The notes: a model not told the origin generated them from the letters alone. A DNA stretch of 64,000 nt from IMGVR_UViG_3300032242_002041:1-64000; one strand, 5' to 3'; numbered from the stretch's first letter, positions 19,270-40,276 are shown. Numbers and translations are program-made.

Positions 19270-19905
19270 TTATCCGCCTAGAGTAACACCGCTACCAATG
19301 GTTACTCCTGAGATATTGAGATAGTATGGTGGATTAAGAGAAATTGCAACAGTTGATATTGCTCCACCGACCTGGGTAAGACCAGCAGTTCTTGCAGTTG
19401 ATATTCCTGCGGCAACCTGTAGTTCATCAACTATGAGTAATCCAGCACTAGCAGACCGGACTCCAGGAGTGTTTACTCGAACGGTAGTGGAAGCAGGTGC
19501 TGTCCATGTACCAGCAACGATTGGTGCACCGGCTGCATAAACACTTAGTACATAAGCATTGGCTGTGGGGGTTGTTAAAGTGTTGGTTGTTAATGTTGTT
19601 GAGTAGGACGCAACTGGCTGTAAAGAACTTACTCCCCTGTAGTCAATCATTACCGCTATAGTACTAGTGCCAGCGTTGGTTAGGGCTACACTTGATTCTG
19701 ATGCAGTGGCAGTTTTATAAAAAATAGTAGAAAATGTGCCACTACCTTGTGCAGAAAGTAAGGTCCATCCGGAGGGTGTGGTAGTTGTTGCAGTTCCTGT
19801 GGTAACAATTATCAAAGTATCACCTGCGGCATACCCAGCAGGTACAGCTACAGTTGGGTTTGCACCCGTTGCGACTGCGCCAACAGCAACAAATGAGACA
19901 GCCAT
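19270..19905 (-). CDS. Small beta-sandwich fibre tip/adhesin protein
   Basis: T/A/V/G-rich with TPSGWTL, and a C-terminal hexapeptide-like ISGVTIGSGVTLGG. Confidence 0.55.
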   Translation of the reverse strand: MAVSFVAVGAVATGANPTVAVPAGYAAGDTLIIVTTGTATTTTPSGWTLLSAQGSGTFSTIFYKTATASESSVALTNAGTSTIAVMIDYRGVSSLQPVASYSTTLTTNTLTTPTANAYVLSVYAAGAPIVAGTWTAPASTTVRVNTPGVRSASAGLLIVDELQVAAGISTARTAGLTQVGGAISTVAISLNPPYYLNISGVTIGSGVTLGG

Positions 19906-22397
19906 TAGGTTCTGCCTACTACTACTTCGATTGTTCCTTCGGCGCCATCGAAGTCCTCAAGTGCTTTGCCAATTACGGTGCCAACTCGAGGATTGGATTC
20001 TGCTCTGGCACGTCCTAAGCCTGCACTAACCATTAGGTCGCCTTTGCGTACCGGACCAACAACAAATGTTGGCACACGTCCTGTGAGTGCCACTGTAGCA
20101 ATGTATTCACATTCTAATCCTTCATTCATTACAAATCCAGGATCAGTAGACACTACTCCAGCTACTCTGCAATCACTATCCACAGCGTTAACTGTGACTT
20201 CAGCTGTGCCACCAAATACCACAACAGTGCCCGGCACATAGTTAGCGTCGGCTGTATATTTTTCTGCCAAGTCAGCGTACTGTGCTGTGGTTGCTTTGCC
20301 GCTATACACACCAGTTGATGATATGGTTACTATCGACGACATAGCACCTGGTGCACCAAAAGCAAAGTTTAAAGTTGCGCCGCTTCCTGTGGAATATAAA
20401 CCAATTGCTCCGGTACCATCCGTAAAAGCTAATCCTCCACCATATGAACCAGATGCTTGCAATCCATAATTTGTGGCAGCAGCCGGGCTGGCATTTGTTC
20501 CTGCAATAACTTTAGCACCAGTAACATTACCGGTTGTACTAATCAGTCCACTTGATGTAACTGATGTCAGTGTGCCAACTGAGGTAATATTTGGTTGTGC
20601 GGCAGTGGTCACAGTGCCAGCTGTGGTTGCTGATCCAGCTGATCCACCAATACTTAACGACGCAGCAGTACCTGTTAGGCCAGTGCCAGCACCAGTAAAC
20701 GATGATCCAGTTACTGTTCCACTAGCACTTAAACTTGTGCCTGTCATTACACCACCTACAACACTTGCGGCTGTGGTTGTGCCAGTGACACTTGTTGACG
20801 AGCCAGTGATTACTCCACCCACTGTACTTGCGGCAGTTACGGTACCACTTACACTGGCACTTGTAGAATACACAGTTGCCCAATAATTACTTGTTCCACC
20901 TAAATTTAGTGTAGCATTGGCTGCTGGAGTTAATGCAATATTACTTTGCCAGCTTGTTGTAGTGTTATTGAATCTCCAGTAGGCCAAGGCATTGTTACCA
21001 AGATCAATACCGCCACCATTTAAGGCAGTGCCAGTATTTTGATTGTTACCTAATGTTATATTAAGTTCGTTGGTAGTTATAGTCTGAGAGTCAATATAAG
21101 TTACGTTACCTTGTACACTCAAGTTACCTGCGATAACAACGTTACCGTCTGTGCCACCAGAACCATTAGGGTCAATGGTAAATGTTGGGCCAGCAGCTAT
21201 GAGTGTGTTTCCACTAAGAGTAATACTACCGCCAACAACACTGGCACCGGTTACAGCACCTGTTACTGATACACTTGAGCCTGTAATAATACCGCCAACA
21301 GTTGAGGCAGCAGTTTGGCTACCAGTTACGCTTGTTGACGTGCCGGTTATTACACCACCCACAGTACTTGCAGCAGTTTGACTACCAGTGACACTTGTAC
21401 TTGATCCAGTGATCACACCACCAGCTACACTAGCGGCAGTTACTCCACCACTTACTGAAACACTAGTACCATTATGAGCTGTACCTGTTACGGTTCCTGA
21501 TACTGATAAACTTGAACCAGTAATTACACCACCTACAGTACTTGCAGCAGTTTGTGAACCGGTAACACTTGTACTTGTTCCAGTAATGACTCCACCTGCT
21601 ACACTAGCGGCTGTAACACCACCTGTAACACTTACCGCAGTTCCAATGTGGGTAGCCGCACTAACGTTGGCTGCACTTGTGATGTTGCCAGTGGCACTTA
21701 ATGTTGTAGCTGATATCACATTGGCACCAGTAATATTGCCGCCTGCGCCAGAACCAGCAATAATATTACCACCAGTAATATTGCCTGTAGCACTTACTAA
21801 TCCGCCTGTGTTGATGTTGCCACCTGTGATGTTACCAGAGACGCTTGATAATCCAGAGGTGTATATTCCAGTTGTAGCAACTACAACAACATTTGATGTT
21901 CCGCCTATGGATATGTTGGCATTGCCACCACTTGTTCCAATATTGGCTTCACTTGTTCCATTTGAAATCTTAGTTGAGCTACCGCTTGCAATACCAGTTA
22001 ATTGACTGCCATTACCAATAAAGTATCCACCAGTAATGTTGCCAGTAGCACTTACTTGTCCGCCTGTTAGTACATTACCACCGGTGATGTTGCCTGTGAC
22101 TGATTCGGTTCCAGAGACTACCGTTCCAGTAGAACTTATGGTCAATATGTTGGCAGTACCAGCTGAGCTGATGGTTACATTACCACTGGCTCTGGTTACT
22201 ACGTTACTAGTGCCATTGATCAATTGGTTACCCGAAGCCGTACTGGCATTGGCCAATACAGTAACCACGTTACTGAGGTTTAAAAAGTACAGTACACCGT
22301 CGGCGTAATTTAGGCTTAATTCGCCATATGATAGGCTAGCCGCTAGAGGAACTGCGGCAACGTTGCCGTTGCGTTTAAGCAAAATTGTGTTAGACAT
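19905..22397 (-). CDS. Repeat-rich tail fibre protein with C-terminal intramolecular-chaperone-like domain
   Basis: 830 aa: MSNTILLKR start, SVTG..TAAS..GGVITG repeats and a YADLAEKY...RVAGVVST...GRVP C-terminal domain. Confidence 0.8.
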   Translation of the reverse strand: MSNTILLKRNGNVAAVPLAASLSYGELSLNYADGVLYFLNLSNVVTVLANASTASGNQLINGTSNVVTRASGNVTISSAGTANILTISSTGTVVSGTESVTGNITGGNVLTGGQVSATGNITGGYFIGNGSQLTGIASGSSTKISNGTSEANIGTSGGNANISIGGTSNVVVVATTGIYTSGLSSVSGNITGGNINTGGLVSATGNITGGNIIAGSGAGGNITGANVISATTLSATGNITSAANVSAATHIGTAVSVTGGVTAASVAGGVITGTSTSVTGSQTAASTVGGVITGSSLSVSGTVTGTAHNGTSVSVSGGVTAASVAGGVITGSSTSVTGSQTAASTVGGVITGTSTSVTGSQTAASTVGGIITGSSVSVTGAVTGASVVGGSITLSGNTLIAAGPTFTIDPNGSGGTDGNVVIAGNLSVQGNVTYIDSQTITTNELNITLGNNQNTGTALNGGGIDLGNNALAYWRFNNTTTSWQSNIALTPAANATLNLGGTSNYWATVYSTSASVSGTVTAASTVGGVITGSSTSVTGTTTAASVVGGVMTGTSLSASGTVTGSSFTGAGTGLTGTAASLSIGGSAGSATTAGTVTTAAQPNITSVGTLTSVTSSGLISTTGNVTGAKVIAGTNASPAAATNYGLQASGSYGGGLAFTDGTGAIGLYSTGSGATLNFAFGAPGAMSSIVTISSTGVYSGKATTAQYADLAEKYTADANYVPGTVVVFGGTAEVTVNAVDSDCRVAGVVSTDPGFVMNEGLECEYIATVALTGRVPTFVVGPVRKGDLMVSAGLGRARAESNPRVGTVIGKALEDFDGAEGTIEVVVGRT

Positions 22398-25300
22398 ACT
22401 TAGTATGTACCACCGTCAATGGTGTCGTTAGCATTTAATACGCTGACTCCACCTTTGTAAACTCCTGTACCAAGTATATTGCCGCCTGTAATGTTGCCTG
22501 TAGCACTTACAGTTCCACCAGTTGCTAAACTACCACCGGTTACTGCACCAGTTACTGAGGTACTCGAGCCAGTAATTACACCACCCACTGTACTTGCAGC
22601 TGTTTGGCTACCAGTTACTGAGGTACTAGATCCAGTAATAACACCGCCAACAACACTAGCACTAGTTACTGTACCTGTTACACTTACTGTAGTACCTGTA
22701 TGGGCTGTAGCACTAACGTTACCGCCAGTGATATTACCAGTGACACTTAACAATCCAGTTACATATTGACCTGTTGTTGCCCAAACTACTACGTTGCTAG
22801 TTCCGCTAATTGTAAGGTTAGCATTACCGTTGAGTGTTGTAGTAAGGTTTGTAGTACCGTTGGTAAGTGCTGTTGCTGTTGTGGCCGCAACACCTGTAAG
22901 TTGGCTACCATTACCAAAGTAATAACTAGCAGTTATGTTGCCTGTAGCACTAACTGTTGAGCCTGTAATGATACCACCAACGGTACTAGCGGCTGTTACT
23001 GCACCCGAAACGCTGGCACTGGCGCCACTTACAGCACCTGTTACTGATACGCTTGAACCGGTGATTACACCACCAACTGTTGAAGCAGCTGTTTGACTAC
23101 CAGTTACGCTTGTACTTGAGCCAGTGATTATACCACCCACTGTACTTGCCGCTGTCACTGCACCCGAAACACTAGCACTTGCACCACTTACAGCACCTGT
23201 TACTGATACACTTGTACCTGTGATTACACCACCAACTGTACTGGCAGCTGTTTGTGATCCAGTTACGCTTGTTGAAGTTCCTGTAATTACGCCACCTGCT
23301 ACACTGGCTGCAGTTATACCACCTGTTACTGATACTGATGCACCAACATGTGCGGCACCTGTATTACCAATTGTAGCGGCACTTACAGTACCGCCAACAA
23401 TACTGGCTAAAGCATTACCAATTGTAGCGGCGTTGATTGTAGCGGCTAAAACTGTACCTGTACCACTTACGGTACCTGTTCCATAGTTGACGTTGCCACC
23501 AGTGATATTGCCACTAGCACTAACTGTTGCGCCGCTTACGGCACCTGTTACACTGGTACTTGAGCCTGTGATAACTCCGCCTGCAACTGAAGCGGCAGTT
23601 ACACCACCACTAACACTTGCACTAGCACCTTGAACGGCACCTGTTACGCTTGCCGAACTTCCAGTGATAACACCGCCCACTGTACTTGCAGCGGTAACTG
23701 TACCACTTACTGAAGCACTTGACCCAGTGATAACACCGCCAACTGTACTAGCGGCAGTTACGGTACCGGATACGCTAGCACTGGCGCCACTTACAGCACC
23801 CGTTACCGATGTGCTTGAGCCAGTAATTACACCACCAACTGTACTAGCGGCAGTTTGTGTTCCAGTTACGCTGGTACTTGTACCAGTAATAACTCCACCT
23901 GCTACTGAGGCAGCTGTTACGCCACCTGATACACTAGCACTTGCGCCTTGAACGGCGCCTGTGACACTTGTACTTGTACCAGTAATTACACCGCCAACTG
24001 TACTAGCGGCAGTTACAGTTCCTGTAACACTTAAACTTGTACCAGTGGCTGCACCAATGTTTGGTGTTGTCAGTGTAGCACCGGCCTTGACAATAATGTT
24101 TCCAGCGCCATCAAACGCTGTGGTTGCATTGTCAACTTTGGCACTGAATACTGTACCAGTTAAACTGATACCAGCTGATGTATTGGCCGTATATGTTGTG
24201 GTTTGACTGAATACTGCAAAACTAATATTACTAGTTCCAAATGTAATTGTTCCTTGTGGTGCATTAACAACAAACGCAGTACCTCCATTAACAGCACCGT
24301 TGGATGTAAAGAAGTAGTCGTTAAGACTTAGGGTATTTGGAACAGATCCGTATGTGTTGGTATCTGTTGAACGAACAATAGCTGTTGCATTAGACCAGGT
24401 ATAAACACCGTTATATGCACCATTAGCTTCGTTTTTAACCAAGATACGTGTGCCAACAGTCTGAACGTTGGCTGTATCAATCAAATTAAACGAGCCAGTA
24501 GTTTGTAAGTATGCACCAACACCGTTTGAAACACCGTTAGGTTGAGTATAGGTAATTGTACCGCCTGTGGTTGTAGCCAAGGTAGTTGTTGTAGCTACAT
24601 AAACTGGTGTGTGGAAGGTTAACCCTGTTGATGCTATTTGATCAACGTAGTATTTAGATGCTGCATCAGTATCTTGTACTGGAGTTAACTGTAAACCGTT
24701 AACAAAAGTATTGGCCAAAACCAAATTACCGAATGGTGTAATATTGATATTGCCGCTACCATTGGTAATGGTTAGTCCTGTGGCATTGTATACTTGTGCG
24801 GTATTTACGTTGGCACCAGTAATATTGCCACTAGCACTAACAGTTGCACTACTTACAGCACCAGTAACACTTGTACTTGATCCGGTAATGACACCACCTG
24901 CTACACTAGCGGCTGTTACACCACCTGTTACACTTGCACTGGCGCCACTTACGGCACCAGTTACTGATGCGCTTGAACCAGTAATAACACCACCGGCAAC
25001 TGAAGCAGCTGTAACACCACCTGATACACTTGTGCTTGAGCCAGTGATTACACCACCTACTGTACTAGCGGCAGTTGCAGTACCAGTTACTGACACACTT
25101 GTTCCTGTAATAACACCACCAACTGTTGACGCGGCAGTTGCAGTACCACTTGTGCTGATTGCACCTGTGCTTAAAATGTTTGCGCCGGATATGTTGGCTG
25201 CACTAGTAAGGTTACCGGTAGAGCTGATTAGGCCGCCTGTTAAAACGTTCCCACCTGTTACGTTTCCACTTACACTTGTACTTGTACCTGTGATTACTCC

Positions 25301-28300
25301 ACCAACTGTACTGGCAGCTGTTTGTGTTCCTGTAACACTGGTACTTGTTCCTGTAATGACTCCGCCTGCTACTGAGGCGGCTGTTACTCCACCTGATACA
25401 CTTGCACTTGCACCTTGCACTGATCCAGTAACACTTGTACTTGAGCCAGTAATTACACCACCAACGGTACTTGCCGCTGTTTGTGTGCCTGTGACACTTG
25501 TTGAAGTACCGGTTATGACACCACCTACAACACTAGCAGCAGTTACGGTACCGGTAACGCTAACTGTGGTACCTGTATGAGCCGTTGCTGAAATGTTACC
25601 ACCAGTGATATTACCAGTTGACGAAATCAATCCGCCTGTTAGTAAATTACCGCCGGTGATGTTACCTGCATTAATTGTGCCGGTTGTTGAAATTGTATTA
25701 GAACCAAATGCAGCCAAGAAACTAGCGGCATTGGTATTGCTGTATCCAGCTGGCAAGCCAGTTATCTGACTACCATTACCAAAAAGGTAACTACCGGTGA
25801 TATTTCCTGTAGCACTAACACTTGTTGCTGTGATTACGCCACCTGCTACACTAGCAGCTGTAACGCCACCAGTAACACTTGTTGAAGTGCCGGTGATTAC
25901 ACCACCTGCTACTGATGCGGCAGTAACTCCACCTGATACGCTAGCACTGGCACCACTCACGGCACCTGTTACACTAGTACTTGAACCAGTAATTACACCA
26001 CCTACAGTACTTGCGGCTGTTTGTGTTCCTGTAACGCTAGTACTTGTACCAGTAATAACTCCACCTGCAACTGATGCGGCAGTTACCCCACCAGCAGTTG
26101 AATAACTACCCGCTGATGATGTGCCAGTAACACTTACAGAGCTACCAGTAATAACACCACCCACTGTACTTGCAGCAGTTACAGTACCACTGGTGCTGAT
26201 TGCACCCGAACTTAATACGTTGCCACCAATGACGTTACCAGACGTTGATATACTGTTGCCAGAGCCTGTAACAACTATGTTACTACCGTTGACTGTCAAC
26301 GTTGTGTCAGTAGCACCAACGGTTACGTTACCAAGATAAAGGGTACTGTTTGATAACCAAAGATCTTTCCAACGATTTGTAGTGTTACCCAAACTGTAGG
26401 TGATGTTTGCTGCGGGTATTAAATTGCTAGCAACTAGTCCTGCGGACAATTGGCCGCCTGTTGAAATATTACCGCCAGCTACGTTACCGGTTACGCTTAA
26501 TACGTTGGTTGCTGAATTATATGTAAATGCTGACGAAGCTGCCAAGTTACCAGCATTGTTATAAACAACCTGTGTGTTTGCTCCTGGAGCAGTTACGTTG
26601 CCACTAATACTACCGGCAAACGCACCAACAAAGTAACCAGCTGTAGTAATATTTCCTGTAGCACTTACTTGTCCGCCAGTTAATACGTTGCCGCCGGTAA
26701 TGTTACCTGAGGCCGAAACAGTAACGAAGCCTGTGGATTGTCTAGTCCAAGAATTTGAAGCTGACGAATAAACATACGTTATACCGTTTACTACTGTGGT
26801 TTGTCCGTCTGTTGGAGTAGTTGGAAATGCCATGATTAAAATCTCCCTACAGCAACTTCAATAATTTGAACGCTGTTATCTGTGATTGTTTCTAAACTCT
26901 TACCAATTACCACACCAGGTTGGAACCGACCAGCTTCAATTGCCATTGCAGTTCCTGGTACTGTACCAGACACGAGTATTTGTCCTTTTGTTACTGGTCC
27001 TTGTACCTGACATGGTACACGACCTGTTAATGCTACTGTTGCTGTCGTTGTTCCTTCAAGTCCGGCATTCATTACATAACTTGGATTTGTAGAAACAATG
27101 CCGGCTACACGAGAATCATGATCTGATGTAGACTGTGTAACTTCAGCATCCCCGTCAAAGATAACCACCGTACCGGGCGGATACTCCTCGTCGGCTGTGT
27201 ACATCTCAGCTAAGTCAGCGTAGAGTGCTGATGTTGCTTTGGCAAACACTGTATTGAAATATGTTGTAGCACTACCAATATTACCAACAGCATTGGCGTT
27301 GGCATTAACAATACTACCCACAGTAATTGTTCCAGTACTTACCGACAAGTTACCGCCGGTAATATTTCCACTTACACTCAATGAGCCAAGTGTGCCAACT
27401 GAGGTAATATTTGTTTGACTTGCTGTGGTGATTGTACCAACTAAACTTGCACCTGTTACAGCACCTGTTACCGATGCAGAACTACCAGTGATAACTCCGC
27501 CAGCAACACTAGCGGCAGTTACGCCACCTGTAACACTTGTTGAAGTACCAGTAATAACTCCACCTGCTACTGAGGCAGCTGTAACGCCACCGCTTACGCT
27601 GGCACTTGCACCACTTACGGCACCTGTTACACTTGCTGAACTACCAGTGATTACACCACCAACTGTACTTGCAGCTGTTTGTGAGCCAGTAACACTTGTT
27701 GAAGTGCCAGTGATAACTCCGCCAGCAACACTAGAGGCTGTTACACCACCTGTTACTGATACCGATGTGCCTGTAATTACACCACCAACAACACTTGCGC
27801 CAGTTACAGCACCAGTAGCACTTACTACGCCGCCAATATACAAACCAGTAGTAGCAAACACTGCCACGTTGCTCGTTCCGCCGATGGTGATGTTGGCGTT
27901 ACCATTTTGAGTTTGTATATCAATCATGGTTGTACCATTTTGAATACGATCGCCCAAGATGTTACCAGTCAAGGTAGCGTTACCTGTTACAGTCAAATCG
28001 CCATTGATTTGTAATCCGCTATTGGCAAACACAGCCACGTTAGGTGTGCCATTAATTGATATAGCCAAGTTACCGCCGCCTGCACCAATATTGGCTTGGC
28101 TAGTACCGTTTACAATAGCTGAGAATGTTCCGCCTGAGCCAACGGTAGCGCCAAAGTCATCAATCCAGTAGTAGCTAGTACCGTCAAATGTGTAACGATA
28201 CTGTACGTTGGTTGTGGTGTTGTACCAGAAATCACCAACTGTTGGGCTGGCAGGAGCAGTTCCACTTGATGTTGAACGCACACCGCCGCCCACAATGTTA

Positions 28301-31650: not shown

Positions 31651-32175
31651 TGTACCAGTGTGATTTGTTGCTGAAACGTTACCGGCAATGACGTTGCCAG
31701 TGACACTTAATAATCCGGTGATATATTCGCCTGTGGTGGCAAACACTGCTACGTTAGCAGTTCCGCCAACGCTGACAGCAACGTTGCCGCCAGATGTACC
31801 AATGTTGACATTGGATGTGCCGTTGGTGATATTGCTGGCGTTAAAGCTGACCACGTTGTTACTGATACTGGTAACACGACCTTTGGAGTCAACTGTTACA
31901 GTAGGAATACTTGTACTGTTACCATATGTTCCAGCAGTCACACCTGAGTTGGCCAAGGTAGTAGTGATTGCAGTTTGACCAGAACCAGTGACATCGCCGG
32001 TTAAACTAATAGTTTGATTTTGAGTAAGGTTAATGATAGCATCGCTACCATTATTGATCTTGGTAAACAAATTACCATCGTTTGTGTTGATAGCCAATTC
32101 GCCCAGAGCCAAACTACCTGTGGTTGGTACAGCATTTGCTATGGCATTGCGTTTTAATAAAATTTGATTACTCAT
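26836..32175 (-). CDS. Giant repeat-rich fibre protein with C-terminal intramolecular-chaperone-like domain
   Basis: 1779 aa: MSNQILLKR start, 21-aa repeats and a YADLAEMY...GRVP C-terminal domain. Confidence 0.8.
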   Translation of the reverse strand: MSNQILLKRNAIANAVPTTGSLALGELAINTNDGNLFTKINNGSDAIINLTQNQTISLTGDVTGSGQTAITTTLANSGVTAGTYGNSTSIPTVTVDSKGRVTSISNNVVSFNASNITNGTSNVNIGTSGGNVAVSVGGTANVAVFATTGEYITGLLSVTGNVIAGNVSATNHTGTNVSVTGTVTAASTVGGVITGSSASVTGAVSGASASVSGGVTAASVAGGVITGTSTSVTGTQTAASTVGGVITGTSASVTGNVTGGNVNYGTGTVSGTGTVLAATVNAATIGNALASIVGGTVSAATIGNTGTAHVGTSVSVTGTATAASTVGGVITGTSTSVTGSQTAASTVGGVITGTSTSVTGSQTAASTVGGVITGTSTSVTGTQTAASTVGGVITGSSTSVTGAVQGASASVSGGVTAASVAGGVITGTSTSVTGTQTAASTVGGVITGTSTSVSGAVTAASVAGGVITGTSTSVTGSQTAASTVGGVITGSSTSVTGAVSGASASVSGGVTAASVAGGVITGTSTSVTGSQTAASTVGGVITGSSTSVTGAVSGASASVSGGVTAASVAGGVITGSSTSVTGSQTAASTVGGVITGSSVSVTGAVSGASASVSGGVTAASVAGGVITGTSTSVTGGVTAASVAGGVITGTSVSVSANVTGGNINTGGQVSATGTATVGNLVVSNNANILGNLNVQGNVTFINSNVITVNDLYIELANNQTTYANINGAGLNVGPQGTPLTNWTYATVANAWTTNVGISATSTVTGGNLATAGTVSATGNVTGGNVLTGGIISSTGNITTAGYFVGAFAGSISGNVTAGGSNTQIQYNNSGNLAGSSAFTFTQTTNALSVGGTITGGNLATAGTISSTGNITGGNISATNHTGTNVSVTGTVTAASTVGGVITGTSTSVTGTQTAASTVGGVITGTSTSVTGSQTAASTVGGVITGSSASVTGAVQGASASVSGGVTAASVAGGVITGTSTSVTGTQTAASTVGGVITGTSTSVTGSQTAASTVGGVITGSSVSVTGAVSGASASVSGGVTAASVAGGVITGTSTSVTGSQTAASTVGGVITGTSTSVTGTQTAASTVGGVITGTSTSVTGSQTAASTVGGVITGTSTSVTGSQTAASTVGGVITGSSTSVTGAVSGATVSASGNVTGGNVLTGGIVSATGNITGGNIVLPGSGGSISGSGNITGGNILTGGIVSATGNITGNYILGNGASLTGVITSVANINLGNSNVTVTASGGNIAASVGGTSNVVVWATTGEYVTGVVSASGNVTGGNILSTGLISTSGNIVGGGVRSTSSGTAPASPTVGDFWYNTTTNVQYRYTFDGTSYYWIDDFGATVGSGGTFSAIVNGTSQANIGAGGGNLAISINGTPNVAVFANSGLQINGDLTVTGNATLTGNILGDRIQNGTTMIDIQTQNGNANITIGGTSNVAVFATTGLYIGGVVSATGAVTGASVVGGVITGTSVSVTGGVTASSVAGGVITGTSTSVTGSQTAASTVGGVITGSSASVTGAVSGASASVSGGVTAASVAGGVITGTSTSVTGGVTAASVAGGVITGSSASVTGAVTGASLVGTITTASQTNITSVGTLGSLSVSGNITGGNLSVSTGTITVGSIVNANANAVGNIGSATTYFNTVFAKATSALYADLAEMYTADEEYPPGTVVIFDGDAEVTQSTSDHDSRVAGIVSTNPSYVMNAGLEGTTTATVALTGRVPCQVQGPVTKGQILVSGTVPGTAMAIEAGRFQPGVVIGKSLETITDNSVQIIEVAVGRF

Positions 32176-32183
32176 AATCTATC

Positions 32184-33029
32184 CTAATATGATCCTGCAT
32201 CTACTACCTGGAAGTCGTTAATTATCTTATACCACGACGTCCACGTTCCACTATAAAGTGTTCTATCCCACTGGATTTTCGCATTATTCAATGTTACTGT
32301 TCCAGGGTAAAATGTTTGTGTTGTTGTTGCTCCACTTGTCAACACTACTAATAATCCTGTATACACTGTACTATCTACTGGGGCTCCGGTTACACCGCTC
32401 CACGAGGTACGATTTACATTGTATGTTCCCATATTTATCAAGCTATTCCAATTATCTGTGTCTGAGCCACGATCTATGGCCACATTAGGAGCGACAATGT
32501 TGCCGGTGACACTGAGCGTTCCTACTATTACTGTACCGGTCGAACTTACTGTTAATACATTGGCCACACCGGCGCTACTAATAGTCACATTGGCATTGCT
32601 GTTGACTACAACATTGCTAGAGCCGCTTGAAATTGAGTTTGCTGAATAGTTTTGTGTGAATACCAGGGCTGTAGACCCAATTAAGATTGGGTTATCGGTG
32701 ATCAATTTCCACTGAGTATCGGCATATATGGAACCCTCAGTGACCATGATGATCATGCCAGCTTCAATTTCGCCGTTGTCGTTGCCGTCACTTGTTCTAG
32801 CCCAGGTACCGTTGGAGCCTGTGCCCACTGTGGCTACATAGTAAAGGCCGTTTTGACTGGCTGTAGTTTGCCCTGTAACCAAAACTCTATCGTTTTGAAC
32901 AAGAGTTACACCGTCAACCACAGTTGGGGTGCCGCCTGCTAGTGTGACGTTGGTTACAGTAACTACACGAGTAGCTTGCTTGTAATCAAGGTTAAAAATC
33001 TGCGCGGCACGCGGTCTAGTTAAGGCCAT
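32184..33029 (-). CDS. Fibre-associated protein
   Basis: 281 aa. The DGVTL...DRVLV..Q....NGLY module is related to modules in the 1477- and 1620-aa fibres. Ends VDAGSY. Confidence 0.7.
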   Translation of the reverse strand: MALTRPRAAQIFNLDYKQATRVVTVTNVTLAGGTPTVVDGVTLVQNDRVLVTGQTTASQNGLYYVATVGTGSNGTWARTSDGNDNGEIEAGMIIMVTEGSIYADTQWKLITDNPILIGSTALVFTQNYSANSISSGSSNVVVNSNANVTISSAGVANVLTVSSTGTVIVGTLSVTGNIVAPNVAIDRGSDTDNWNSLINMGTYNVNRTSWSGVTGAPVDSTVYTGLLVVLTSGATTTQTFYPGTVTLNNAKIQWDRTLYSGTWTSWYKIINDFQVVDAGSY

Positions 33030-33090: not shown

Positions 33091-33108
33091 TGTAATAAAA
33101 TTTATTGT

Positions 33109-34326: not shown

Positions 34327-34348
34327 GATTTGTTTTCCTTAATGTTGT

Positions 34349-34903: not shown

Positions 34904-34913
34904 GTGTTATTCC

Positions 34914-35357
34914 TTAGCTAAATGTAACTGGGAATATGAACGTTGCTGGGAAACTGACCACATCATTCATAAAGAATACAATCACGCCAGGTTGTCCAGA
35001 TTGATCATTTTGTTGAAGATTGACTGTCATTGTAGTAGTTGTGCTTCCAGATGACCAGGTCACAGTTCGATTGCCTGTGCCGTAGGTACTAAAGAATGCT
35101 TGATTATTGGCAGTTAGATAACTGACAGCAACACCGTTTGAAGTACTTCCAGACCCACTGGTGGCGTTGAGAATAAATCCATTGCTGATCATTGTGGCTG
35201 TTTGGTCTTCTATCCATTGCTGACTGTTGCCACTCTGAGTCATCTCGGTGAAGCCAACGACTCCGTTACTGCCGCTAGGGCCAGCGCCGCCGCCTGTGCC
35301 TACTGTCCATCCAGGTCCTACTGTCCAGCCTGGTCCAAATGTTGTTGGTGCTACCAT
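34914..35357 (-). CDS. Small GPG-tagged virion/adhesin paralogue
   Basis: FGPGWTVGPGWTV N-terminus, WSSGS and FPVTFS. Confidence 0.6.
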   Translation of the reverse strand: MVAPTTFGPGWTVGPGWTVGTGGGAGPSGSNGVVGFTEMTQSGNSQQWIEDQTATMISNGFILNATSGSGSTSNGVAVSYLTANNQAFFSTYGTGNRTVTWSSGSTTTTMTVNLQQNDQSGQPGVIVFFMNDVVSFPATFIFPVTFS

Positions 35358-35413
35358 ACGTCGTTATCCTTTGTTAATGTTAGTACCGGGCTGTTACACC
35401 CGGCACTGTCTTT

Positions 35414-38400
35414 TTACTTTTGAATCTGCGCTTTTATTGCTTCGATATCTTGTCTTAACTCTTTGACTGTTTCAATCAAAAATGGTATTACCATTATATA
35501 GTTAACTGACTTGATACCTTCTGCATTTGTACTAACTGCTTCAGGAAGTATTTGTTCTACTGCCTGTGCAATCATACCGTATGCGTGACCAGATCCATCT
35601 TTCCAATCGTATCCAACACCTTGCAATCCATCAACTACTTGACCGGCATTGACTATTGGTGTAACATTGTCTTTGAGACTAGCATCACTGGTATTAACAA
35701 AGTTCTGTGCATATACATTTCCACTTACAACCAAGTTGCCTGTGGCAGCAATATTTGAACTTCCGTCTACAACACTGATTTCAGCAGTTCCAAGACCGTT
35801 ACTGATACTGTAAACAGTTGTAGTAGTGGTCAACACACGAACGTCAATCAAGTCGCCTACTGCAGGAGCTTCAGTAAATGTAAGTGTCACACCGCTGACA
35901 GCATAAGCTGTTGTTGGAATCTGTTGCACACCGTTGATACTGACAATTGTACCAGCTGTGGTAGCATTTCCACTCAATGTAAACACTACTGTAGTGCCAT
36001 CACCGTTGAACTGTTGATCAGTGATCAATGTATAACTTGGAGCACCTACTTGAGTCCACATGTTGTTGTCATACACTTCTAAATAATTAGTAGTTGTATT
36101 AAAACGGAACTGACCAGTTGAACCCACAGGACGCTGTGCGCTGTTACCAACCGGAACTTTGATACTGTTGGTTGCGTTAAACGACACAATTGAATTGATT
36201 GTTTGTGTAGCATTTCCAAAACTAGCTGTGCCTGTACCTGCGTCAACAAAGAACGTAATATTACCTGTACTGTCGTAGATACCAGTATTGGTATTCAACT
36301 GACTGTAGTTTAAGAACAAGTTGGCCGCTGGGCTATCAATACCACCTGATGTTGTAACCAAGAAATTGCCTTCAACATTGCCTGTAGCACTGAGGTTGCC
36401 AGCTGTGGTGTCACCCGGTATATTTACTGTAGAGGTTGTGTTACCTAAAGTCAGTGTGGCGCTGGTAGTATTAGCACCTATCTGAATCAAGTTAGGATAT
36501 TGATCTCCAATAGAAATTTTGCCGCCGCCTGGGTTGGCAACTCCTATACTAAGGAAAGTACTGTTTGTCCAAATTTGACTAGAATTTAGACGAATATTTT
36601 CAGCTGTTACATTACCTGTGGTACTGACATTACCGTTAATGTTAATGCCAGTGTCGTAGAATGTAGCAACAACGTTTGAACTAGTGCCAATAGCAACAAC
36701 TACGTTACCATTTGGAGTAATAACATTGGCGTAGCTTCCACCATTGGTAATTTTAGTTGAGCTTACATTGGCGGCATTAATGTTACTGATATAGTAGCCA
36801 TCACCAAACAAATAATTGGCTGTTATAATATTACCAGTTGCTGATACATAGCCACCAGTTAAAATGTTACCACCAGTTACGTTACCACCAGCTGAAATAT
36901 TTCCGGCTCCTGTGATATTTCCGTTAGAGCCACTGGTTTTTAAGTTGCCGCCGGTGACATCACCTGTGGCACTTACATAACCACCTGTGGCAATGTTGCC
37001 GCCAGTTACTGTACCTGTTGCACTAACCGCACCTGCTGTGTTTACGTTGCCGGCTGTTACAGTGCCTATAGCACTTACATAGCCACTTGCGGTTACGTTG
37101 GCCAAATTGGCTATGCCACTGACACTAACTCCGTTCAGGATGCCAACGCTTGTCAGACTTGAGTTGACTACGTTGTTGGCAATGAATGTGCCTGTTAAGG
37201 TTTCAGCGTTGGCTGAACTGGCTGTAACACCTGTTAACTGGCTACCATTACCAATGATATAATTACCAGTGACGTTGCCTGTAGCACTTACATAGCCGCC
37301 TGTGGCCACATTACCTACTGTGGCTGTACCTGTGGCACTTACGACTCCTGTGGTCAATAAATTACCACCGTGAACATCGCTTGTGGCCGACACTTGACCG
37401 GCTGTGATTAAATTACCACCAGTTACGTCGCCTGTGGCTGTTACAAAACCAGTAGTAGAAACATTTGCACCATAAATTGTATCACCCGATGTAACTGATC
37501 CAGTTGCACTTACTAAGCCGCTGGTTAGAACATTGCCGCCTGTAATGTTGCCTGTACCAGAAATTGTTCCACCAGTAGACAAATTACCACCTGTTACTGT
37601 ACCGGTAGCACTTACTGTACCACCTGTGGCTAAATTACCTACTGTGGCTGTGCCGGTGGCACTTACTGTACCGCCTGTGGCCAAGTTGCCACCTGTTACT
37701 GTACTGGTTACACTTAGGCTTGTACCTGTTGCAGCACCAATGTTAGGTGTTGTTAAATTAGCACCAGCTTTGACAATAATGTTACCTAAGCCGTCAAAGG
37801 CTGTAGTGTTGTTGTCAACTTTGGCACTGAATACTGTGCCAGTTAAGCTGATACCAGCTGCTGTGTTGGCTGTGTATGCTGTAACTTGGCTGAATACTGC
37901 AAACGTAATATCACTTGTACCAAAAGTAATTGTTCCTGTTGGCGCATTAACAACAAACGCAGTACCTGCATTAACGTTACCATTGGTTGTAAAGAAGTAG
38001 TCGTTCAAACTTAGAGTATTTGGTTGTGTACCATATGTATCAGTGTCTAGGGTACGAACAATTGTTGTAGCATTGGCCCAACCGTACACACCGTTCCAGG
38101 CAGCATTGGCTTCGTTCTTGATCAGGATACGTGTGCCAACTGTTTGAACATTGGCTGTGTCAATTAAATCAAACGAGCCTGTGGTTTGCAAATATGCACC
38201 AACACCGTTACTTACACCATTGGGTTGAGCATAGCTAACTGTACCACCTGTGGCTGTGTCCAACGTTGTTGAGGTAGCCGCATAAACTGGTGTGTGGAAG
38301 GTTAATCCTGTTGATGCAAGATTGTCAACATATAGTTTATTGGCCGCATCTTGATCTTGCGCTGGATAGGCTACACCGTTGATATAGGTGTTGGCCAGTA

Positions 38401-40276
38401 CAACATTACCAAAGGTGCCAAGATTAATATTTCCTGTACCTGCGGACAAGGTCAATGCAGTTGCACCATATACTTGTGCGGTGTTTACATTGGCACCTGT
38501 AATATTGCCTGTGGCACTTACTGTACCACCAGTGTTGATGTTGCCACCGTTTACATTGCCACTTGCAGTTACCAAACCGCTGGTGTTGATATTGCCACCA
38601 GTGATGTTGCCAGCACCAGACAATTCGCCACCTGATCCGCTGGTATAAATGTTGCCGCCAGTGATTGAACCTGTGGCACTTACAGCACCACCTGTGTATA
38701 AATTAGCACCAGTAATGTCCCCGCTAGCACTTGCATAACCATTAGCGTTTACATTAGCACCTGTGATATCTCCACTAGCTGAAACAGTACCACCTGTGGC
38801 CAAATTGCCACCAGTTACTGTACCAGAAGCTGTTACAATACCGATTGTGTTTACGTTGCCACCGGTTACGTCGCCTGTGGCACTTACATAGCCACTAGTA
38901 TTGATGTTACCACCTGTTTGGGTAACTTCTCCGTTGACACTAAGGCTAGTTAGTACTCCAACTGTTTGTAGGCTTGAATTGATTACGGTAGAATTAAGGA
39001 ATGTGCCTGTTAAGGTTTCAGCATTGGCTGAGTCAGCTGTGACGCCTGAGATGTAACGTCCATTACCAACAAAGTAGTTAGAAGTTGCAATATTACCTGT
39101 GGCAGTTACAACTCCGCCAGTTACAAGGTTAGCACCGGTTACTTCGCCTGTGGCAGTTATCAAACCACCTGTTATGATGTTGCCGCCAATGATGTTGCCA
39201 GAACCACTGATGTCTCCGCCTGATCCGCTGGTATAAAGGTTACCACCTGTGATCGAACCAGTGGCACTTACAGCACCACCTGTGTATAAATTAGCACCGG
39301 TTACATCACCTGACGCACTTGCATAGCCGCCTGTGACCAAGTTGCCACCAGTTACTGTACCAGAGGCTGTTACCACACCAGTTGTGTTTACGTTACCACC
39401 AGTTACGTCGCCTGTGGCACTTACATATCCGCCAGTGGCAATGTTGCCACCTGTTACTGTACCGGTAGCACTTACTTGACCACCTGTGGCCAAATTACCA
39501 GAGGTTGTGTTGCCGCTTACAGATAAGTTGGACAATACGCCAACTGTTTGTAGACTTGAATTAATTACATTGTTGGCAAGGAATGTTCCGGTTAGTGTTT
39601 CAGCATTGGCTGAATCGGCTGTGACGCCTGTAATATTGCGACCATTACCGAAGAAATAATTGGCTGTTGTAATATTGCCAGTGGCACTAACATAACCGGC
39701 TGTTAGAATGTTGCCGCCTGTGATGTTGCCGCCTGCACTGGCTGTTCCAGCAGTGGCCAAGTTACCACCTGTGACGGTGCCTGTGACATTGGCATCACTG
39801 ATGATGTTTCCACCCAAACTGGTTGTGCCTGAAATTTTAACATTGCCACCAATGGTAGCATTGGCTGTGTGGATATTGGCATAGCCTGTGACTGTGATTA
39901 CAGTGTTGGATTCAGCTGTGCTGGTAAAGGCTGTGACAAATTCTTTGGTACTTTCTTGCCATACAAAGGCAATATTTTCGCTAGTACCACGTTGTCCAAT
40001 AAAACCAATGTCCACTGCTGGAGTACCAGTTTGCATACTGGCCAATAAAATAACCGGATCTTCAATTGTGGTAATTGTAGTATCAATTGCTGTGGTATTG
40101 CCTTGAACTGTCAAGTTACCTGTAACTGTCAAGTCTGAACCATAGGTCAGATTGTTGGCAATTTTTGTACTTGTAATTGAGTAGTTTTGTAGTTTGGTAT
40201 TTGCATTAATACCAAGATACACGTTACCTGCTACTGCATCGGTTATTTGATTATTATTAATTCTTGTGACAGCCAT
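35414..40276 (-). CDS. Giant fibre protein with C-terminal peptidase S74-type chaperone domain
   Basis: 1620 aa with SATG.VTGGN repeats and a C-terminal SDASLKDNV...YDWKD...GMIAQ...VNY..VIPFLIETVKEL domain. Confidence 0.85.
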   Translation of the reverse strand: MAVTRINNNQITDAVAGNVYLGINANTKLQNYSITSTKIANNLTYGSDLTVTGNLTVQGNTTAIDTTITTIEDPVILLASMQTGTPAVDIGFIGQRGTSENIAFVWQESTKEFVTAFTSTAESNTVITVTGYANIHTANATIGGNVKISGTTSLGGNIISDANVTGTVTGGNLATAGTASAGGNITGGNILTAGYVSATGNITTANYFFGNGRNITGVTADSANAETLTGTFLANNVINSSLQTVGVLSNLSVSGNTTSGNLATGGQVSATGTVTGGNIATGGYVSATGDVTGGNVNTTGVVTASGTVTGGNLVTGGYASASGDVTGANLYTGGAVSATGSITGGNLYTSGSGGDISGSGNIIGGNIITGGLITATGEVTGANLVTGGVVTATGNIATSNYFVGNGRYISGVTADSANAETLTGTFLNSTVINSSLQTVGVLTSLSVNGEVTQTGGNINTSGYVSATGDVTGGNVNTIGIVTASGTVTGGNLATGGTVSASGDITGANVNANGYASASGDITGANLYTGGAVSATGSITGGNIYTSGSGGELSGAGNITGGNINTSGLVTASGNVNGGNINTGGTVSATGNITGANVNTAQVYGATALTLSAGTGNINLGTFGNVVLANTYINGVAYPAQDQDAANKLYVDNLASTGLTFHTPVYAATSTTLDTATGGTVSYAQPNGVSNGVGAYLQTTGSFDLIDTANVQTVGTRILIKNEANAAWNGVYGWANATTIVRTLDTDTYGTQPNTLSLNDYFFTTNGNVNAGTAFVVNAPTGTITFGTSDITFAVFSQVTAYTANTAAGISLTGTVFSAKVDNNTTAFDGLGNIIVKAGANLTTPNIGAATGTSLSVTSTVTGGNLATGGTVSATGTATVGNLATGGTVSATGTVTGGNLSTGGTISGTGNITGGNVLTSGLVSATGSVTSGDTIYGANVSTTGFVTATGDVTGGNLITAGQVSATSDVHGGNLLTTGVVSATGTATVGNVATGGYVSATGNVTGNYIIGNGSQLTGVTASSANAETLTGTFIANNVVNSSLTSVGILNGVSVSGIANLANVTASGYVSAIGTVTAGNVNTAGAVSATGTVTGGNIATGGYVSATGDVTGGNLKTSGSNGNITGAGNISAGGNVTGGNILTGGYVSATGNIITANYLFGDGYYISNINAANVSSTKITNGGSYANVITPNGNVVVAIGTSSNVVATFYDTGININGNVSTTGNVTAENIRLNSSQIWTNSTFLSIGVANPGGGKISIGDQYPNLIQIGANTTSATLTLGNTTSTVNIPGDTTAGNLSATGNVEGNFLVTTSGGIDSPAANLFLNYSQLNTNTGIYDSTGNITFFVDAGTGTASFGNATQTINSIVSFNATNSIKVPVGNSAQRPVGSTGQFRFNTTTNYLEVYDNNMWTQVGAPSYTLITDQQFNGDGTTVVFTLSGNATTAGTIVSINGVQQIPTTAYAVSGVTLTFTEAPAVGDLIDVRVLTTTTTVYSISNGLGTAEISVVDGSSNIAATGNLVVSGNVYAQNFVNTSDASLKDNVTPIVNAGQVVDGLQGVGYDWKDGSGHAYGMIAQAVEQILPEAVSTNAEGIKSVNYIMVIPFLIETVKELRQDIEAIKAQIQK

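What the first reader, a model, noticed from the sequence alone, without database searches (positions are those of the whole stretch)
19270..40276. Terminal docking code suggesting a branched, modular fibre network
Seen: twice a gene ending D(G/A)G(T/S)Y (32184: VDAGSY; 22400: IDGGTY) is immediately followed by a gene that starts MSNxILLKRN...P...SL..GEL..N..DG.L and ends in the same YADLAE..GRVP chaperone domain. The 1779-aa protein also carries an internal P.VGDFWYNTTT...Y.FDG.SYYWID module, and the next gene begins MAFPTTPTDGQTTVVNGITYVY....SW. Short (I)xNGTSxxNI linker modules recur in all the fibres. Inference: paired plug and socket motifs chain separately encoded fibres (about 5,700 aa in the four largest) into long or branched appendages, with gene order mirroring assembly order.
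Basis: partly seen in the sequence, partly recalled or inferred. Interest (0 to 1): 0.62.

Follow-up and report, generated by a model that had tools for sequence, protein, structure and literature searches.

The report
Two-part phage fibres with T4-type joints
In this uncultivated jumbo phage, two very long fibres are each probably built from two adjacent genes whose products clip together end to end, through a joint whose head is related to the head of phage T4's long-tail-fibre protein gp37; the proposed branched network is not supported.

Summary
In the 228-kb virus record, D[GA]G[TS]Y occurs only twice among 796 ORFs. Both are exact C-termini, and each lies 2-8 nt upstream of the only two genes starting MSNxILLKR.

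The ILLKR head is homologous to the N-terminus of T4-type gp37, the distal long-tail-fibre subunit, which trimeric gp36 binds. The tail-then-head rule holds well beyond this window. It is met in 54 of 67 distinct gene pairs from 80 metagenomic phage loci and in Ralstonia phage RsoM2USA.

A 3+3 complex prediction scored 0.69, against 0.00 for the best control. It places the last residues of the 281-aa protein (VVDAGSY) against residues 1-10 of the 1779-aa protein.

The YADLAE..GRVP end is a distant Peptidase_G2-type intramolecular chaperone, with a fold like the phi29 gp12 C-terminus.

The second proposed pair, GDFWY module with FPTTP head, has no support: there is no co-occurrence and no detectable relationship. 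Branching is not supported either.

My best reading is three fibres: a single-chain 1620-aa fibre, 281+1779 aa, and 1477+830 aa. Relatives carry at least four other matched tail/head classes, so a lock-and-key set is plausible.

This is a new member of a known kind, of moderate interest.

The parts
35414..40276 (-). 1620-aa single-chain fibre. Head is MAVTRINNNQ; shaft has 17/34-aa repeats. The C-terminal Peptidase_S74 intramolecular chaperone covers residues 1530-1581, about 35534-35689.
   Evidence: Pfam Peptidase_S74 scored 46.2 bits against a cut-off of 22. PHROG tail-fibre and baseplate-wedge families match the C-terminal part. Tandem repeats.
32184..33029 (-). 281-aa proximal connector. 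It has a conserved N-terminal domain (1-130), a short shaft, a conserved knob of about 95 aa and the tail ..KIINDFQVVDAGSY.
   Evidence: 67 related loci share the N-terminal part. The knob family was aligned in A3. PHROG fibre and structural families match residues 10-199.
32187..32207 (-). Plug 1: the last seven codons, VVDAGSY, of the 281-aa protein.
   Evidence: Residues 275-281 are the lowest-error contacts in the complex prediction. The motif is unique to C-termini in this genome.
32086..32175 (-). Socket 1: the first 30 codons of the 1779-aa protein, MSNQILLKRN..P..L..GELAIN. This is a gp37-N-like, Mtd_N-like head.
   Evidence: Contacts fall at residues 1-10, 15, 17-18, 21-22, 26 and 28. 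tblastn finds gp37 N-termini in 923 phage records. Head profile E 1.5e-23.
26836..32175 (-). 1779-aa distal fibre subunit. It has about 32 copies of a 21-aa repeat (63-bp DNA period) and an internal GDFWY module at 28165-28245.
26839..27222 (-). C-terminal YADLAE..GRVP..VGRF domain of the 1779-aa protein. It is a Peptidase_G2-like intramolecular chaperone.
   Evidence: 22 of 38 family members hit Pfam Peptidase_G2, best E 2.5e-5. The model has pLDDT 84.8. Foldseek matches the phi29 gp12 C-terminus, 3gqh and 3suc, at TM 0.57-0.61.
22400..26833 (-). 1477-aa proximal fibre subunit. FP head MAFPTTPTDGQ..NGITYVY..W at 26732-26833; about 25 copies of the 21-aa repeat; tail ..NDTIDGGTY.
22403..22423 (-). 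Plug 2: the last seven codons, TIDGGTY, of the 1477-aa protein.
   Evidence: The same end precedes gp37-N-like heads in L034, in RsoM2USA gene 415 and in 54 of 67 distinct pairs.
22308..22397 (-). Socket 2: the first 30 codons of the 830-aa protein, MSNTILLKRN..P..L..GELSLN.
   Evidence: Head profile E 1.1e-14; alignment A2.
19905..22397 (-). 830-aa distal fibre subunit. The Peptidase_G2-like chaperone domain is at 19908-20279.
   Evidence: Pfam Peptidase_G2 E 0.0032, below the cut-off. It is the first member of alignment A1. The fold model was built on this sequence.

Best explanation
The region is the fibre-gene cluster of an uncultivated jumbo myovirus. The record is 228 kb and estimated about 66% complete.

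I read it as encoding three long, probably trimeric fibres:
1. A single-chain 1620-aa fibre ending in a Peptidase_S74 chaperone.
2. A two-part fibre made of the 281-aa connector plus the 1779-aa distal subunit.
3. A two-part fibre made of the 1477-aa proximal subunit plus the 830-aa distal subunit.

In fibres 2 and 3 the upstream gene product ends in ..(V/I)D(A/G)G(S/T)Y-COOH. The downstream product starts with a gp37-type head, MSNxILLKRN..P..L..GEL..N..DG.

Inferred mechanism: three tails and three heads interlock. The last seven or so residues of each tail lie as a parallel strand beside residues 3-10 of a head. The terminal Tyr packs against the conserved Pro17 and the GEL-A motif. This continues the fibre across the gene boundary, as in T4, where trimeric gp36 binds the N-terminal region of gp37.

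The distal subunits fold with help from their C-terminal Peptidase_G2-like domain. By analogy with phi29 gp12, this domain is probably cut off afterwards.

Shown here: the motifs, the homology of the head, the adjacency rule across phages, and the fold of the C-terminal domain.
Inferred: binding itself (predicted only), trimer stoichiometry, cleavage, and where the 281-aa and 1477-aa proteins attach on the virion.
For: - Both motifs are unique and terminal in the genome.
- Head homology: PHROG 'long tail fiber protein distal subunit' families match at their own N-termini. tblastn hits gp37 N-termini in 923 phage records. The alignment with T2 gp37 shares K8, R9, P17, G25, L27, N30 and D33.
- T2: the gp36-like gene ends ..QDFGYY, followed 8 nt later by gp37 [12 protein letters not shown]...
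- Further instances: RsoM2USA gene 415 ends ..VIDGGTY and gene 416 starts MSNTLLLKRS. L034, the closest relative and so not independent, has a three-link series..VIDAGSY > MSNQILLKR...DTIDGGTY > MANTILIKRS.
- In 80 IMG/VR loci chosen by the head alone, 54 of 67 distinct pairs have an upstream ORF ending D[GA]Gx[YF].
- Complex prediction, 3 x residues 150-281 of the 281-aa protein with 3 x residues 1-115 of the 1779-aa protein: ipSAE 0.69 (three runs 0.69, 0.73, 0.67), best of three controls 0.00. That mark was reached by 58 of 80 solved complexes and 2 of 110 mismatched pairs. Partner pLDDT was 91-92 and the runs share at least 95% of contacts. The contacts are exactly the conserved tail and head residues.
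- No solved structure of gp36 or of the gp37 N-terminus exists that the model could have memorised.
- Chaperone domain.
Against: - Binding is only predicted. My own alignments were used, and the 3+3 set-up differs from the tool's calibration.
- T-even gp36 tails (QDFGYY) are not detected by a profile of the DGGxY tails, so homology on the plug side with T4 is only a loose D-x-G-x-Y likeness.
- Exceptions to adjacency exist: RsoM2USA gene 418, two cyanophages and 13 of 67 distinct pairs.
- Adjacent segments are inherited together anyway, so co-variation alone cannot prove interaction.
- The split into three separate fibres rests on negative evidence, namely that no partner was found for the FP head.
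- The cluster sits between neck and head genes, far from the giant baseplate genes at 73-92 kb. The attachment site is therefore open, and the fibres may not be baseplate fibres at all.
Confidence: 0.7

Rival explanations
1. A single four-part linear chain, 281 > 1779 > 1477 > 830. After the chaperone domain of the 1779-aa protein is cut off, the FP head of the 1477-aa protein docks on the newly exposed tip. T2/T6 gp38 caps proteolytically processed gp37 in a similar way.
For: - FP-head genes are preceded by a chaperone-ended fibre gene in about half of 55 loci, with tight spacing of -1 or 9-11 nt.
- Precedent: the gp37 C-terminus is cleaved and then capped by gp38, with lock-and-key subtypes (PMC3157838).
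- A rare '..AL-YADLAE' variant just before the chaperone domain is seen in the window's 1779-aa protein and, among the other loci listed, in five FP-followed proteins and one protein with no downstream gene in view; the printed lists were capped.
Against: - Chaperone-ended genes are followed just as often by non-fibre genes: the 220-aa xARYR protein, GPGW proteins, or the connector gene.
- The segment before the chaperone domain (GNIGS.TTYFNTVFAKATSAQ) is nearly the same whatever follows, so there is no clear lock-and-key co-variation.
- FP-head genes also follow a 233-aa non-fibre protein and '..WFNGAMVRGA' ends.
Confidence: 0.15
2. One reading: the FP head of the 1477-aa protein plugs into the internal GDFWY module of the 1779-aa protein and makes a side branch.
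For: Only the juxtaposition in this one window.
Against: - None of about 16 chaperone-ended proteins upstream of FP-head genes has such a module within the 600-1000 residues in view. The window's own module lies 465 residues from the end, so it would have been seen.
- The FP-head profile scores -3.6 bits on the module, and BLAST finds nothing.
- No T4 gp10-like branching domain, nor any other Pfam branching domain, is detected.
Confidence: 0.05
3. The motif pairing is a by-product with no protein contact. The tail codons might serve as the ribosome-binding site or coupling signal of the next gene, or the two ends may simply be inherited together as one recombination cassette.
For: - Genes are tightly packed, with 2-8 nt spacers in the window.
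- GGTGG and AGGA strings lie near the starts.
- Junction cassettes move as units on the tree of the connector's N-terminal domain, which linkage alone could produce.
Against: - The two window tails use different codons, gac ggt ggt aca tac against gat gca gga tca tat.
- The spacer between tail and start varies from -1 to 126 nt in 54 pairs while the peptide stays at the exact C-terminus.
- In L047-L050 a matched tail and head stay paired although another gene lies between them.
- T4 biochemistry and the complex prediction both point to contact.
Confidence: 0.07

Closest known systems
Phage T4/T2 long tail fibre, gp36-gp37 joint of the distal half-fibre
   Same: - The head of the downstream protein is homologous to the gp37 N-terminus.
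- The partner is encoded immediately upstream.
- The upstream tail ends D-x-G-x-Y (T2: QDFGYY).
- Gene order runs proximal to distal.
- Trimeric gp36 binds the gp37 N-terminal region (PMC3004832).
   Different: - The joint is used twice in tandem.
- The upstream partners (281 aa with a knob, and a 1477-aa repeat fibre) are not detectable gp36 homologues.
- The distal subunits end in a Peptidase_G2-like chaperone, whereas T4 uses a gp38/gp57A-dependent tip.
- No gp34/gp35 homologues were identified.
- The cluster lies beside neck and head genes.
T-even gp37 C-terminus / gp38 N-terminus lock-and-key subtypes (PMC3157838)
   Same: A few subtypes of a fibre's C-end are each invariably linked in the genome to one subtype of the next gene's N-terminal attachment domain. 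In this clade the pairs are GTNWR>QVQYRRG, YTDLA>TVVQFRRG, EPVDLG>TVLQFRRG, VPxSTL>LDGTTGIS and DGGTY>ILLKR, with no mismatches among the 40 classified pairs (16, 6, 1, 16 and 1; four of the VPxSTL pairs have one gene in between).
   Different: Here the downstream partner is another long fibre segment, whereas gp38 is a small adhesin. The sequences are unrelated to gp38.
Bacillus phage phi29 gp12 appendage, C-terminal auto-chaperone (Pfam Peptidase_G2, MEROPS G2)
   Same: - A C-terminal domain of about 125 residues on a trimeric fibre or spike.
- Weak but recurrent Pfam hits.
- Fold match to 3gqh and 3suc.
- Invariant Asp and Glu in YA-D-LA-E.
   Different: - Sequence similarity is below Pfam's cut-off for the window's own copies.
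- Foldseek ranks capsid cement proteins and the phi29 gp8.5 base equally high or higher.
- Cleavage has not been shown.
Branched receptor-binding complexes: Klebsiella podophages KP32/K11 (branching domain plus conserved docking peptide), Ackermannviridae, RaK2/phiKp24
   Same: Separately encoded fibres or spikes are joined through a short conserved N-terminal docking element on the secondary protein (PMC13352976, PMC9700779).
   Different: Those systems dock side-on to T4 gp10-like branching domains. No such domain is found here, and the predicted joint is end-to-end.
Mtd_N, the N-terminal domain of Bordetella phage BPP-1 major tropism determinant (Pfam PF18454)
   Same: The QYRRGT heads of the sister junction classes are bona fide Mtd_N, at 35-45 bits against a cut-off of 26.3. 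The ILLKR head shares the pattern K/R-R..P..L..GE...D.
   Different: The window's heads score below the cut-off: E 0.027 for one and no hit for the other.

Membership tests
T4-type gp36/gp37 fibre joint | The downstream protein starts with the gp37-type N-terminal head. | tested here: met
   PHROG 1699, 19966 and 35830 ('LTF distal subunit') match from profile positions 6-7 up to position 71-122. 923 phage records matched, mostly Tequatrovirus gp37. Alignment A2. Head profile E 1.5e-23 and 1.1e-14.
T4-type gp36/gp37 fibre joint | The partner is encoded directly upstream, with the joint at its C-terminus. | tested here: met
   2- and 8-nt spacers in the window. 54 of 67 distinct pairs elsewhere. 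T2 and STP4-a gp36 end in QDFGYY or QDFGYYS directly before gp37.
T4-type gp36/gp37 fibre joint | The upstream protein is a gp36 homologue. | tested here: not met
   No PHROG or Pfam gp36 hit for the 281-aa or 1477-aa proteins. The tail profile does not detect T2 or STP4-a gp36. Only a D-x-G-x-Y likeness remains.
T4-type gp36/gp37 fibre joint | Physical binding of the two trimers. | tested here: inconclusive
   Prediction only: ipSAE 0.69 against a best control of 0.00. That mark was reached by 58 of 80 solved complexes and 2 of 110 mismatched pairs. pLDDT 91-92, at least 95% contact agreement.
Peptidase_G2 intramolecular chaperone (phi29 gp12 type) | Sequence match to Pfam PF11962. | tested here: inconclusive
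   The 830-aa copy scores E 0.0032, 17.3 bits against a cut-off of 25. The 1779-aa copy has no hit. 22 of 38 family members hit, best E 2.5e-5.
Peptidase_G2 intramolecular chaperone (phi29 gp12 type) | Fold like the gp12 C-terminal fragment. | tested here: met
   Model pLDDT 84.8. Foldseek: 3suc TMq 0.61 and 3gqh TMq 0.57, probability 1.00. Capsid cement proteins and the phi29 gp8.5 base score similarly.
Peptidase_G2 intramolecular chaperone (phi29 gp12 type) | Autoproteolytic release after trimer folding. | not testable with these tools
   Only invariant D and E in YADLAE were seen. Their correspondence to the phi29 catalytic residues was not verified.
Peptidase_S74 chaperone (endosialidase / T5 pb1 type), 1620-aa fibre | Pfam PF13884 above its cut-off at the C-terminus. 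| tested here: met
   46.2 bits against a cut-off of 22, residues 1530-1581.
Mtd_N (PF18454) | Pfam match above its cut-off at the N-terminus. | tested here: inconclusive
   Window heads: E 0.027 (14.8 bits against 26.3) and no hit. QYRRGT heads of relatives score 35-45 bits.
Branched RBP systems (T4 gp10-like branching domain plus docking peptide) | A branching domain in the primary fibre. | tested here: not met
   No Pfam domain other than S74 and a sub-threshold FapA hit in any of the five fibres. No co-occurrence of the proposed GDFWY 'socket' with FP heads.

The most novel reading that the evidence does not exclude
This jumbo-phage clade may use a set of at least five mutually exclusive tail/head junction classes as a plug-and-play code:
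- DGGxY > ILLKR
- DGTNWR.. > QVQYRRGT
- EPVDLG.LT > TVLQFRRGT
- Y(T/N)DLA.GEA.VGA > TVVQFRRGT
- VP..STL... > L.LDGTTGIS

Under this reading, fibre segments of any length can be re-assorted between phages provided tail and head travel together, and several different fibres can assemble in one cell without cross-joining. The DGGxY > gp37-head joint would then be the ancestral, pan-myovirus version, whose atomic logic (strand addition plus a terminal aromatic residue in a Pro/GEL pocket) has never been resolved, even in T4.
Probability: 0.4. Interest if true: 0.65.

Novelty: new member of a known kind. Interest (0 to 1): 0.5.

Why it matters
Multi-gene fibres are how large phages build long, re-targetable host-recognition organelles. 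For T4, the gp36-gp37 joint is known from genetics and biochemistry, but no solved structure of gp36 or of the gp37 N-terminus was found here.

This work contributes three things:
- A residue-level, testable model of that joint.
- Evidence that the same tail/head rule holds in jumbo phages and many uncultivated viruses.
- Sister junction classes that always travel as matched pairs.

If the classes prove orthogonal, they would give simple rules for annotating which fibre genes form one fibre. They would also guide swapping of fibre segments in laboratory phage-host work. For this window, the result turns about 5,700 aa of 'hypothetical' repeat protein into three interpretable fibres.

Tried and rejected
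1. Tail codons acting as a Shine-Dalgarno site. Rejected: the codons differ between the two tails, and spacers range from -1 to 126 nt.
2. One gene split by frameshift or read-through. Rejected: spacers and frames vary, and each downstream gene has its own ATG.
3. Rosetta-stone fusions with tail and head motifs internal to one protein. None found. The junction motifs are terminal in all loci, except one VPTSSTLYIY inside the L047 connector. Connector genes fused directly to a chaperone end simply lack a joint.
4. Profile of the last 25 residues of the tails. It detects RsoM2USA gene 415 (E 1.7e-8), but not T2 or STP4-a gp36. A second profile, built without L034, does not detect the window's own tails, which sit on long low-complexity proteins.
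5. Homology between the FP head and the GDFWY module. Not detectable.
6. The connector's N-terminal domain recurring inside the 1477-aa protein. BLAST finds only shaft similarity.
7. Fold of the connector's N-terminal 190 residues. The model was poor (pLDDT 62.6), there was no Foldseek match at E of 0.001 or better, and the Atlas gave only unnamed phage clusters. Its attachment site stays unknown.
8. Sequence searches of the PDB for the chaperone domain, the gp37-like head and T2 gp36 found nothing meaningful.
9. Near-identical DNA in cultured phages. Only a 545-bp capsid-gene match to Vibrio phage 2.275.O.

Not used:
- The large protein searches, because the claim does not rest on absence of relatives.
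- The read-mapping tools.
- Any genetic code other than table 11.
Full report
**What the window is.** The window is the first 64 kb of a 228,286-bp IMG/VR virus record, estimated 66% complete. PHROG scans place the finding inside the structural module of a contractile-tailed jumbo phage:
- tube, 6065-7258
- sheath, 7949-11515
- head-tail adaptor, 13120-13890
- a gene matching tail-sheath and sheath-stabiliser families, 16908-18191
- the fibre cluster, 18.6-40.3 kb
- major head protein, 45711-46907
- protease, then portal at 49887-51722

Giant ORFs of 1141 and 4454 aa, which I take to be baseplate genes although I did not scan them, lie far away at 73-90 kb of the record. No cultured phage is close at the DNA level.

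**Checking the observation.** The gene order is:
- 1620 aa
- three small GPGW proteins and a cupin-like ORF
- 281 aa, ending ..VVDAGSY
- 1779 aa, from MSNQILLKRN.. to ..YADLAE..GRVP..VGRF
- 1477 aa, from MAFPTTPTDGQ.. to ..TIDGGTY
- 830 aa, from MSNTILLKRN.. to ..YADLAE..GRVP..VGRT
- 211 aa, then 221 aa

Spacers at the three fibre-fibre boundaries are 8, 2 and 2 nt. In all 796 ORFs of the record, D[GA]G[TS]Y and ILLKR each occur twice only, always terminal and always paired. A head profile built from other phages picks out only these two proteins, at E 1.5e-23 and 1.1e-14. The shafts are made of 63-bp (21-aa) repeats with higher-order periods of 126-285 bp. There are 32, 25 and 7 repeat cores in the three repeat fibres, and the about-34-aa NGTS module recurs.

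**What the ILLKR head is.** PHROG families annotated 'long tail fiber protein distal subunit' match it at their own N-termini. A tblastn search with residues 1-125 finds 923 phage records, mostly the first 60-80 residues of gp37 of T-even phages. It also finds cyanophages and the 344-kb Ralstonia phage RsoM2USA, at 56% identity. Aligned with T2 gp37 ([39 protein letters not shown]), the invariant positions are K8, R9, P17, G25, L27, N30 and D33. [quoted passage not shown] T2 gene 36 ends ..QDFGYY eight nucleotides before gene 37.

- RsoM2USA gene 415 ends ..VIDGGTY, and gene 416 starts MSNTLLLKRS.
- The closest metagenomic relative, L034, has three links in a row..VIDAGSY > MSNQILLKR (671 aa) ..DTIDGGTY > MANTILIKRS...
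- I fetched 80 IMG/VR loci by the head alone. In 54 of 67 distinct pairs (81%), the ORF ending just upstream terminates in D[GA]Gx[YF]: DGGTY 19, DGGTF 17, DGGSF 5, DGGSY 4. Spacers range from -1 to 126 nt.
- Exceptions exist: RsoM2USA gene 418 and two cyanophages.
- T-even gp36 tails are too divergent for a tail profile to detect.

**Predicted contact.** One complex job was allowed. I used three copies of residues 150-281 of the 281-aa protein (alignment A3) with three copies of residues 1-115 of the 1779-aa protein (alignment A4).
- Score: ipSAE 0.69 (runs 0.69, 0.73, 0.67); best of three controls 0.00.
- That mark was reached by 58 of 80 solved complexes and 2 of 110 mismatched pairs.
- Partner pLDDT was 91-92, and the runs share at least 95% of contacts. 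The tool notes that my own alignments and the multi-copy set-up make these counts approximate.
- The interface is residues about 265-281 (..KIINDFQVVDAGSY) against residues 1-10, 15, 17-18, 21-22, 26 and 28 of the head.
- The lowest-error pairs run D277-L6, A278-L7/K8, G279-K8/R9, S280-R9/N10 and Y281-N10/P17/A28. This is a parallel strand addition, with the terminal Tyr against the invariant Pro and GEL-A motif.
- No solved structure of gp36 or of the gp37 N-terminus exists, so the result is unlikely to come from memory.
- This supports binding but does not demonstrate it.

**The C-terminal YADLAE..GRVP domain.**
- Aligned over 38 copies, it has invariant D and E in YA-D-LA-E, plus GRVP and other positions.
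- The window's 830-aa copy hits Pfam Peptidase_G2 ('IMC autoproteolytic cleavage domain') only at E 0.003. However, 22 of the 38 copies hit it, best E 2.5e-5.
- An AlphaFold model (pLDDT 84.8) matches the phi29 gp12 C-terminal fragment and pre-mature gp12 at TM 0.57-0.61. It also matches capsid cement proteins and the phi29 head-fibre base.
Cleavage here is inferred.
- The 1620-aa fibre carries the other chaperone type, Peptidase_S74, instead.

**The second proposed pair.** FP-head genes (MAFP.SPTNGQ..NGITY.Y....W) are common; 55 loci were analysed. About half follow a chaperone-ended fibre gene with -1 or 9-11 nt spacing. Others follow a 233-aa non-fibre protein or ends such as ..WFNGAMVRGA. 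None of about 16 upstream chaperone-ended proteins has a GDFWYN-type module in the 600-1000 residues visible. A profile of 38 FP heads scores -3.6 bits on the window's module, and BLAST finds nothing. Chaperone-ended genes are followed by many kinds of gene. The segment before the chaperone domain is almost the same whatever follows. The simplest reading is that a chaperone end marks the distal end of one fibre and the FP head starts the next fibre. A weaker alternative is that the FP head docks on the processed tip, as gp38 does on cleaved gp37 in T2/T6 (PMC3157838). That alternative cannot be excluded. One small hint for it is the '..AL-YADLAE' variant seen here and in several FP-followed proteins.

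**Sister junction classes.** Homologues of the 281-aa connector occur in 67 loci. Their C-ends and the next gene's N-termini fall into matched classes:
- ..DGTNWR(R/F)......(T/S) > M.(S/T)Q(V/I)QYRRG (16 of 16)
- ..Y(T/N)DLA.GEA.VGA > MPTVVQFRRGT (6 of 6)
- ..EPVDLG.LT > MPTVLQFRRGT (3 loci)
- ..VP..S(T/V)L... > M.L.LDGT(T/A)GIS (16 of 16, four of them with one gene in between)
- ..DAGSY > ILLKR

The QYRRGT heads are bona fide Pfam Mtd_N. The same VP..STL tail also occurs on proteins with other N-termini and is still followed by an LDGTTGIS head. On a tree of the connector's N-terminal domain the classes are scattered. The tree needs 22 label changes, and well-supported branches force at least 5, 5 and 4 for the three main classes, yet tail and head never mismatch. 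This mirrors the 'lock-and-key' argument made for gp37/gp38 subtypes (PMC3157838). Physical linkage of adjacent segments could contribute to the pattern.

**Recombination within the cluster.**
- The L034 671-aa protein has the head of the window's 1779-aa protein. Its last about 30 residues are nearly identical to those of the 1477-aa protein. The [chaperone end + FP head] segment is therefore gained or lost by recombination between shaft repeats.
- Some connector homologues are fused directly to a chaperone-ended shaft and have no joint.
- Orthologues of the 1620-aa fibre carry the G2-like chaperone in most relatives, but the S74 type here and in L034.

**Verdict.** It is wrong or unsupported for the GDFWY/FPTTP pair and for branching. 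The system is a new member of a known kind: multi-gene fibres joined by conserved terminal adaptors, as in the T4 long tail fibre. Two results are useful beyond the window: a residue-level model of a joint for which no solved structure was found, and a family of matched junction classes. Where the proximal proteins attach on the virion remains unknown.

Noticed in passing
window 44706-45641 (-): A 311-aa ORF matching homing-endonuclease PHROGs (E 2.5e-22) sits directly beside the major head protein gene at 45711-46907.
   Followed up: no
window 33781-35357 (-) and 33109-33780 (-): Three paralogous small proteins (147, 184 and 181 aa) start with repeats of the G-P-G-(W/F)-x-(V/I) kind, such as GPGWTVGPGW, GPGFSIGPGF and GPGVSIGPGW. 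A 223-aa ORF follows that looks cupin- or pirin-like by eye. None has a PHROG hit. Similar GPGW proteins, ending ..WSAYRTRFGY, precede the connector gene in many relatives. They may be fibre accessory or lectin-like proteins.
   Followed up: partly
window 18119-18604 (+): A 161-aa ORF carries a NUDIX-box-like motif, GGRVESGETLLEAMTRECREELG. This was read from the sequence and not scanned. It converges on the conserved 221-aa 'M.ARYR.DY' gene (18596-19261), which closes the fibre cluster in nearly all relatives.
   Followed up: no
window 24711-25580 (+), 27425-27910 (+), 37533-38000 (+): Long antisense ORFs rich in P, V, T and L lie inside the fibre genes. They mirror the G/T/S/A/V repeat codons and are almost certainly not genes.
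   Followed up: partly
L034:9090-11105 compared with window 22400-32175: In the closest relative, one 671-aa gene has the head of the window's 1779-aa gene and the tail of its 1477-aa gene. Repeat-mediated recombination seems to insert or delete the chaperone end plus FP head as a block.
   Followed up: partly
window 35534-35689 compared with L001-L067: The 1620-aa fibre ends in a Peptidase_S74 chaperone here and in L034. Its orthologues in most relatives end in the Peptidase_G2-like ..IEVVVGRF domain. The chaperone types have been swapped on one fibre scaffold.
   Followed up: partly
L155, L160, L161, L170, L172: A possible further junction class: proteins ending ..(W/Y)F(N/S)G(A/C)M(V/L)RGA (the only complete one, in L155, starts like the connector) are followed after 9 nt by an FP-head gene. 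This suggests the FP head can itself be a docking head.
   Followed up: no
G000 contig C1, 77153-90517 (+), outside the window: A 4454-aa ORF and a 1141-aa ORF just before it, which I take to be baseplate genes although I did not scan them. A 339-aa ORF with a copy of the G2-like chaperone domain (about 41% identity to the 830-aa protein's) lies just downstream, at 91332-92351.
   Followed up: no
L069 (Ralstonia phage RsoM2USA, MG752970, genes 415-418): These genes are annotated as hypothetical proteins. Genes 415/416 form a DGGTY > LLLKR fibre pair. Gene 418 has a second gp37-like head with no matching tail upstream. The head matches four places in that genome.
   Followed up: partly
loci, and window about 27223-27240: A rare variant just before the chaperone domain..AT(T/S)AL-YADLAE in place of ..ATSAQ-YADLAE. 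It occurs in the window's 1779-aa protein (seen) and, among the other loci listed, in five FP-followed proteins and one protein with no downstream gene in view; the printed lists were capped. It may be a clade effect or a hint of tip-to-FP-head matching.
   Followed up: no
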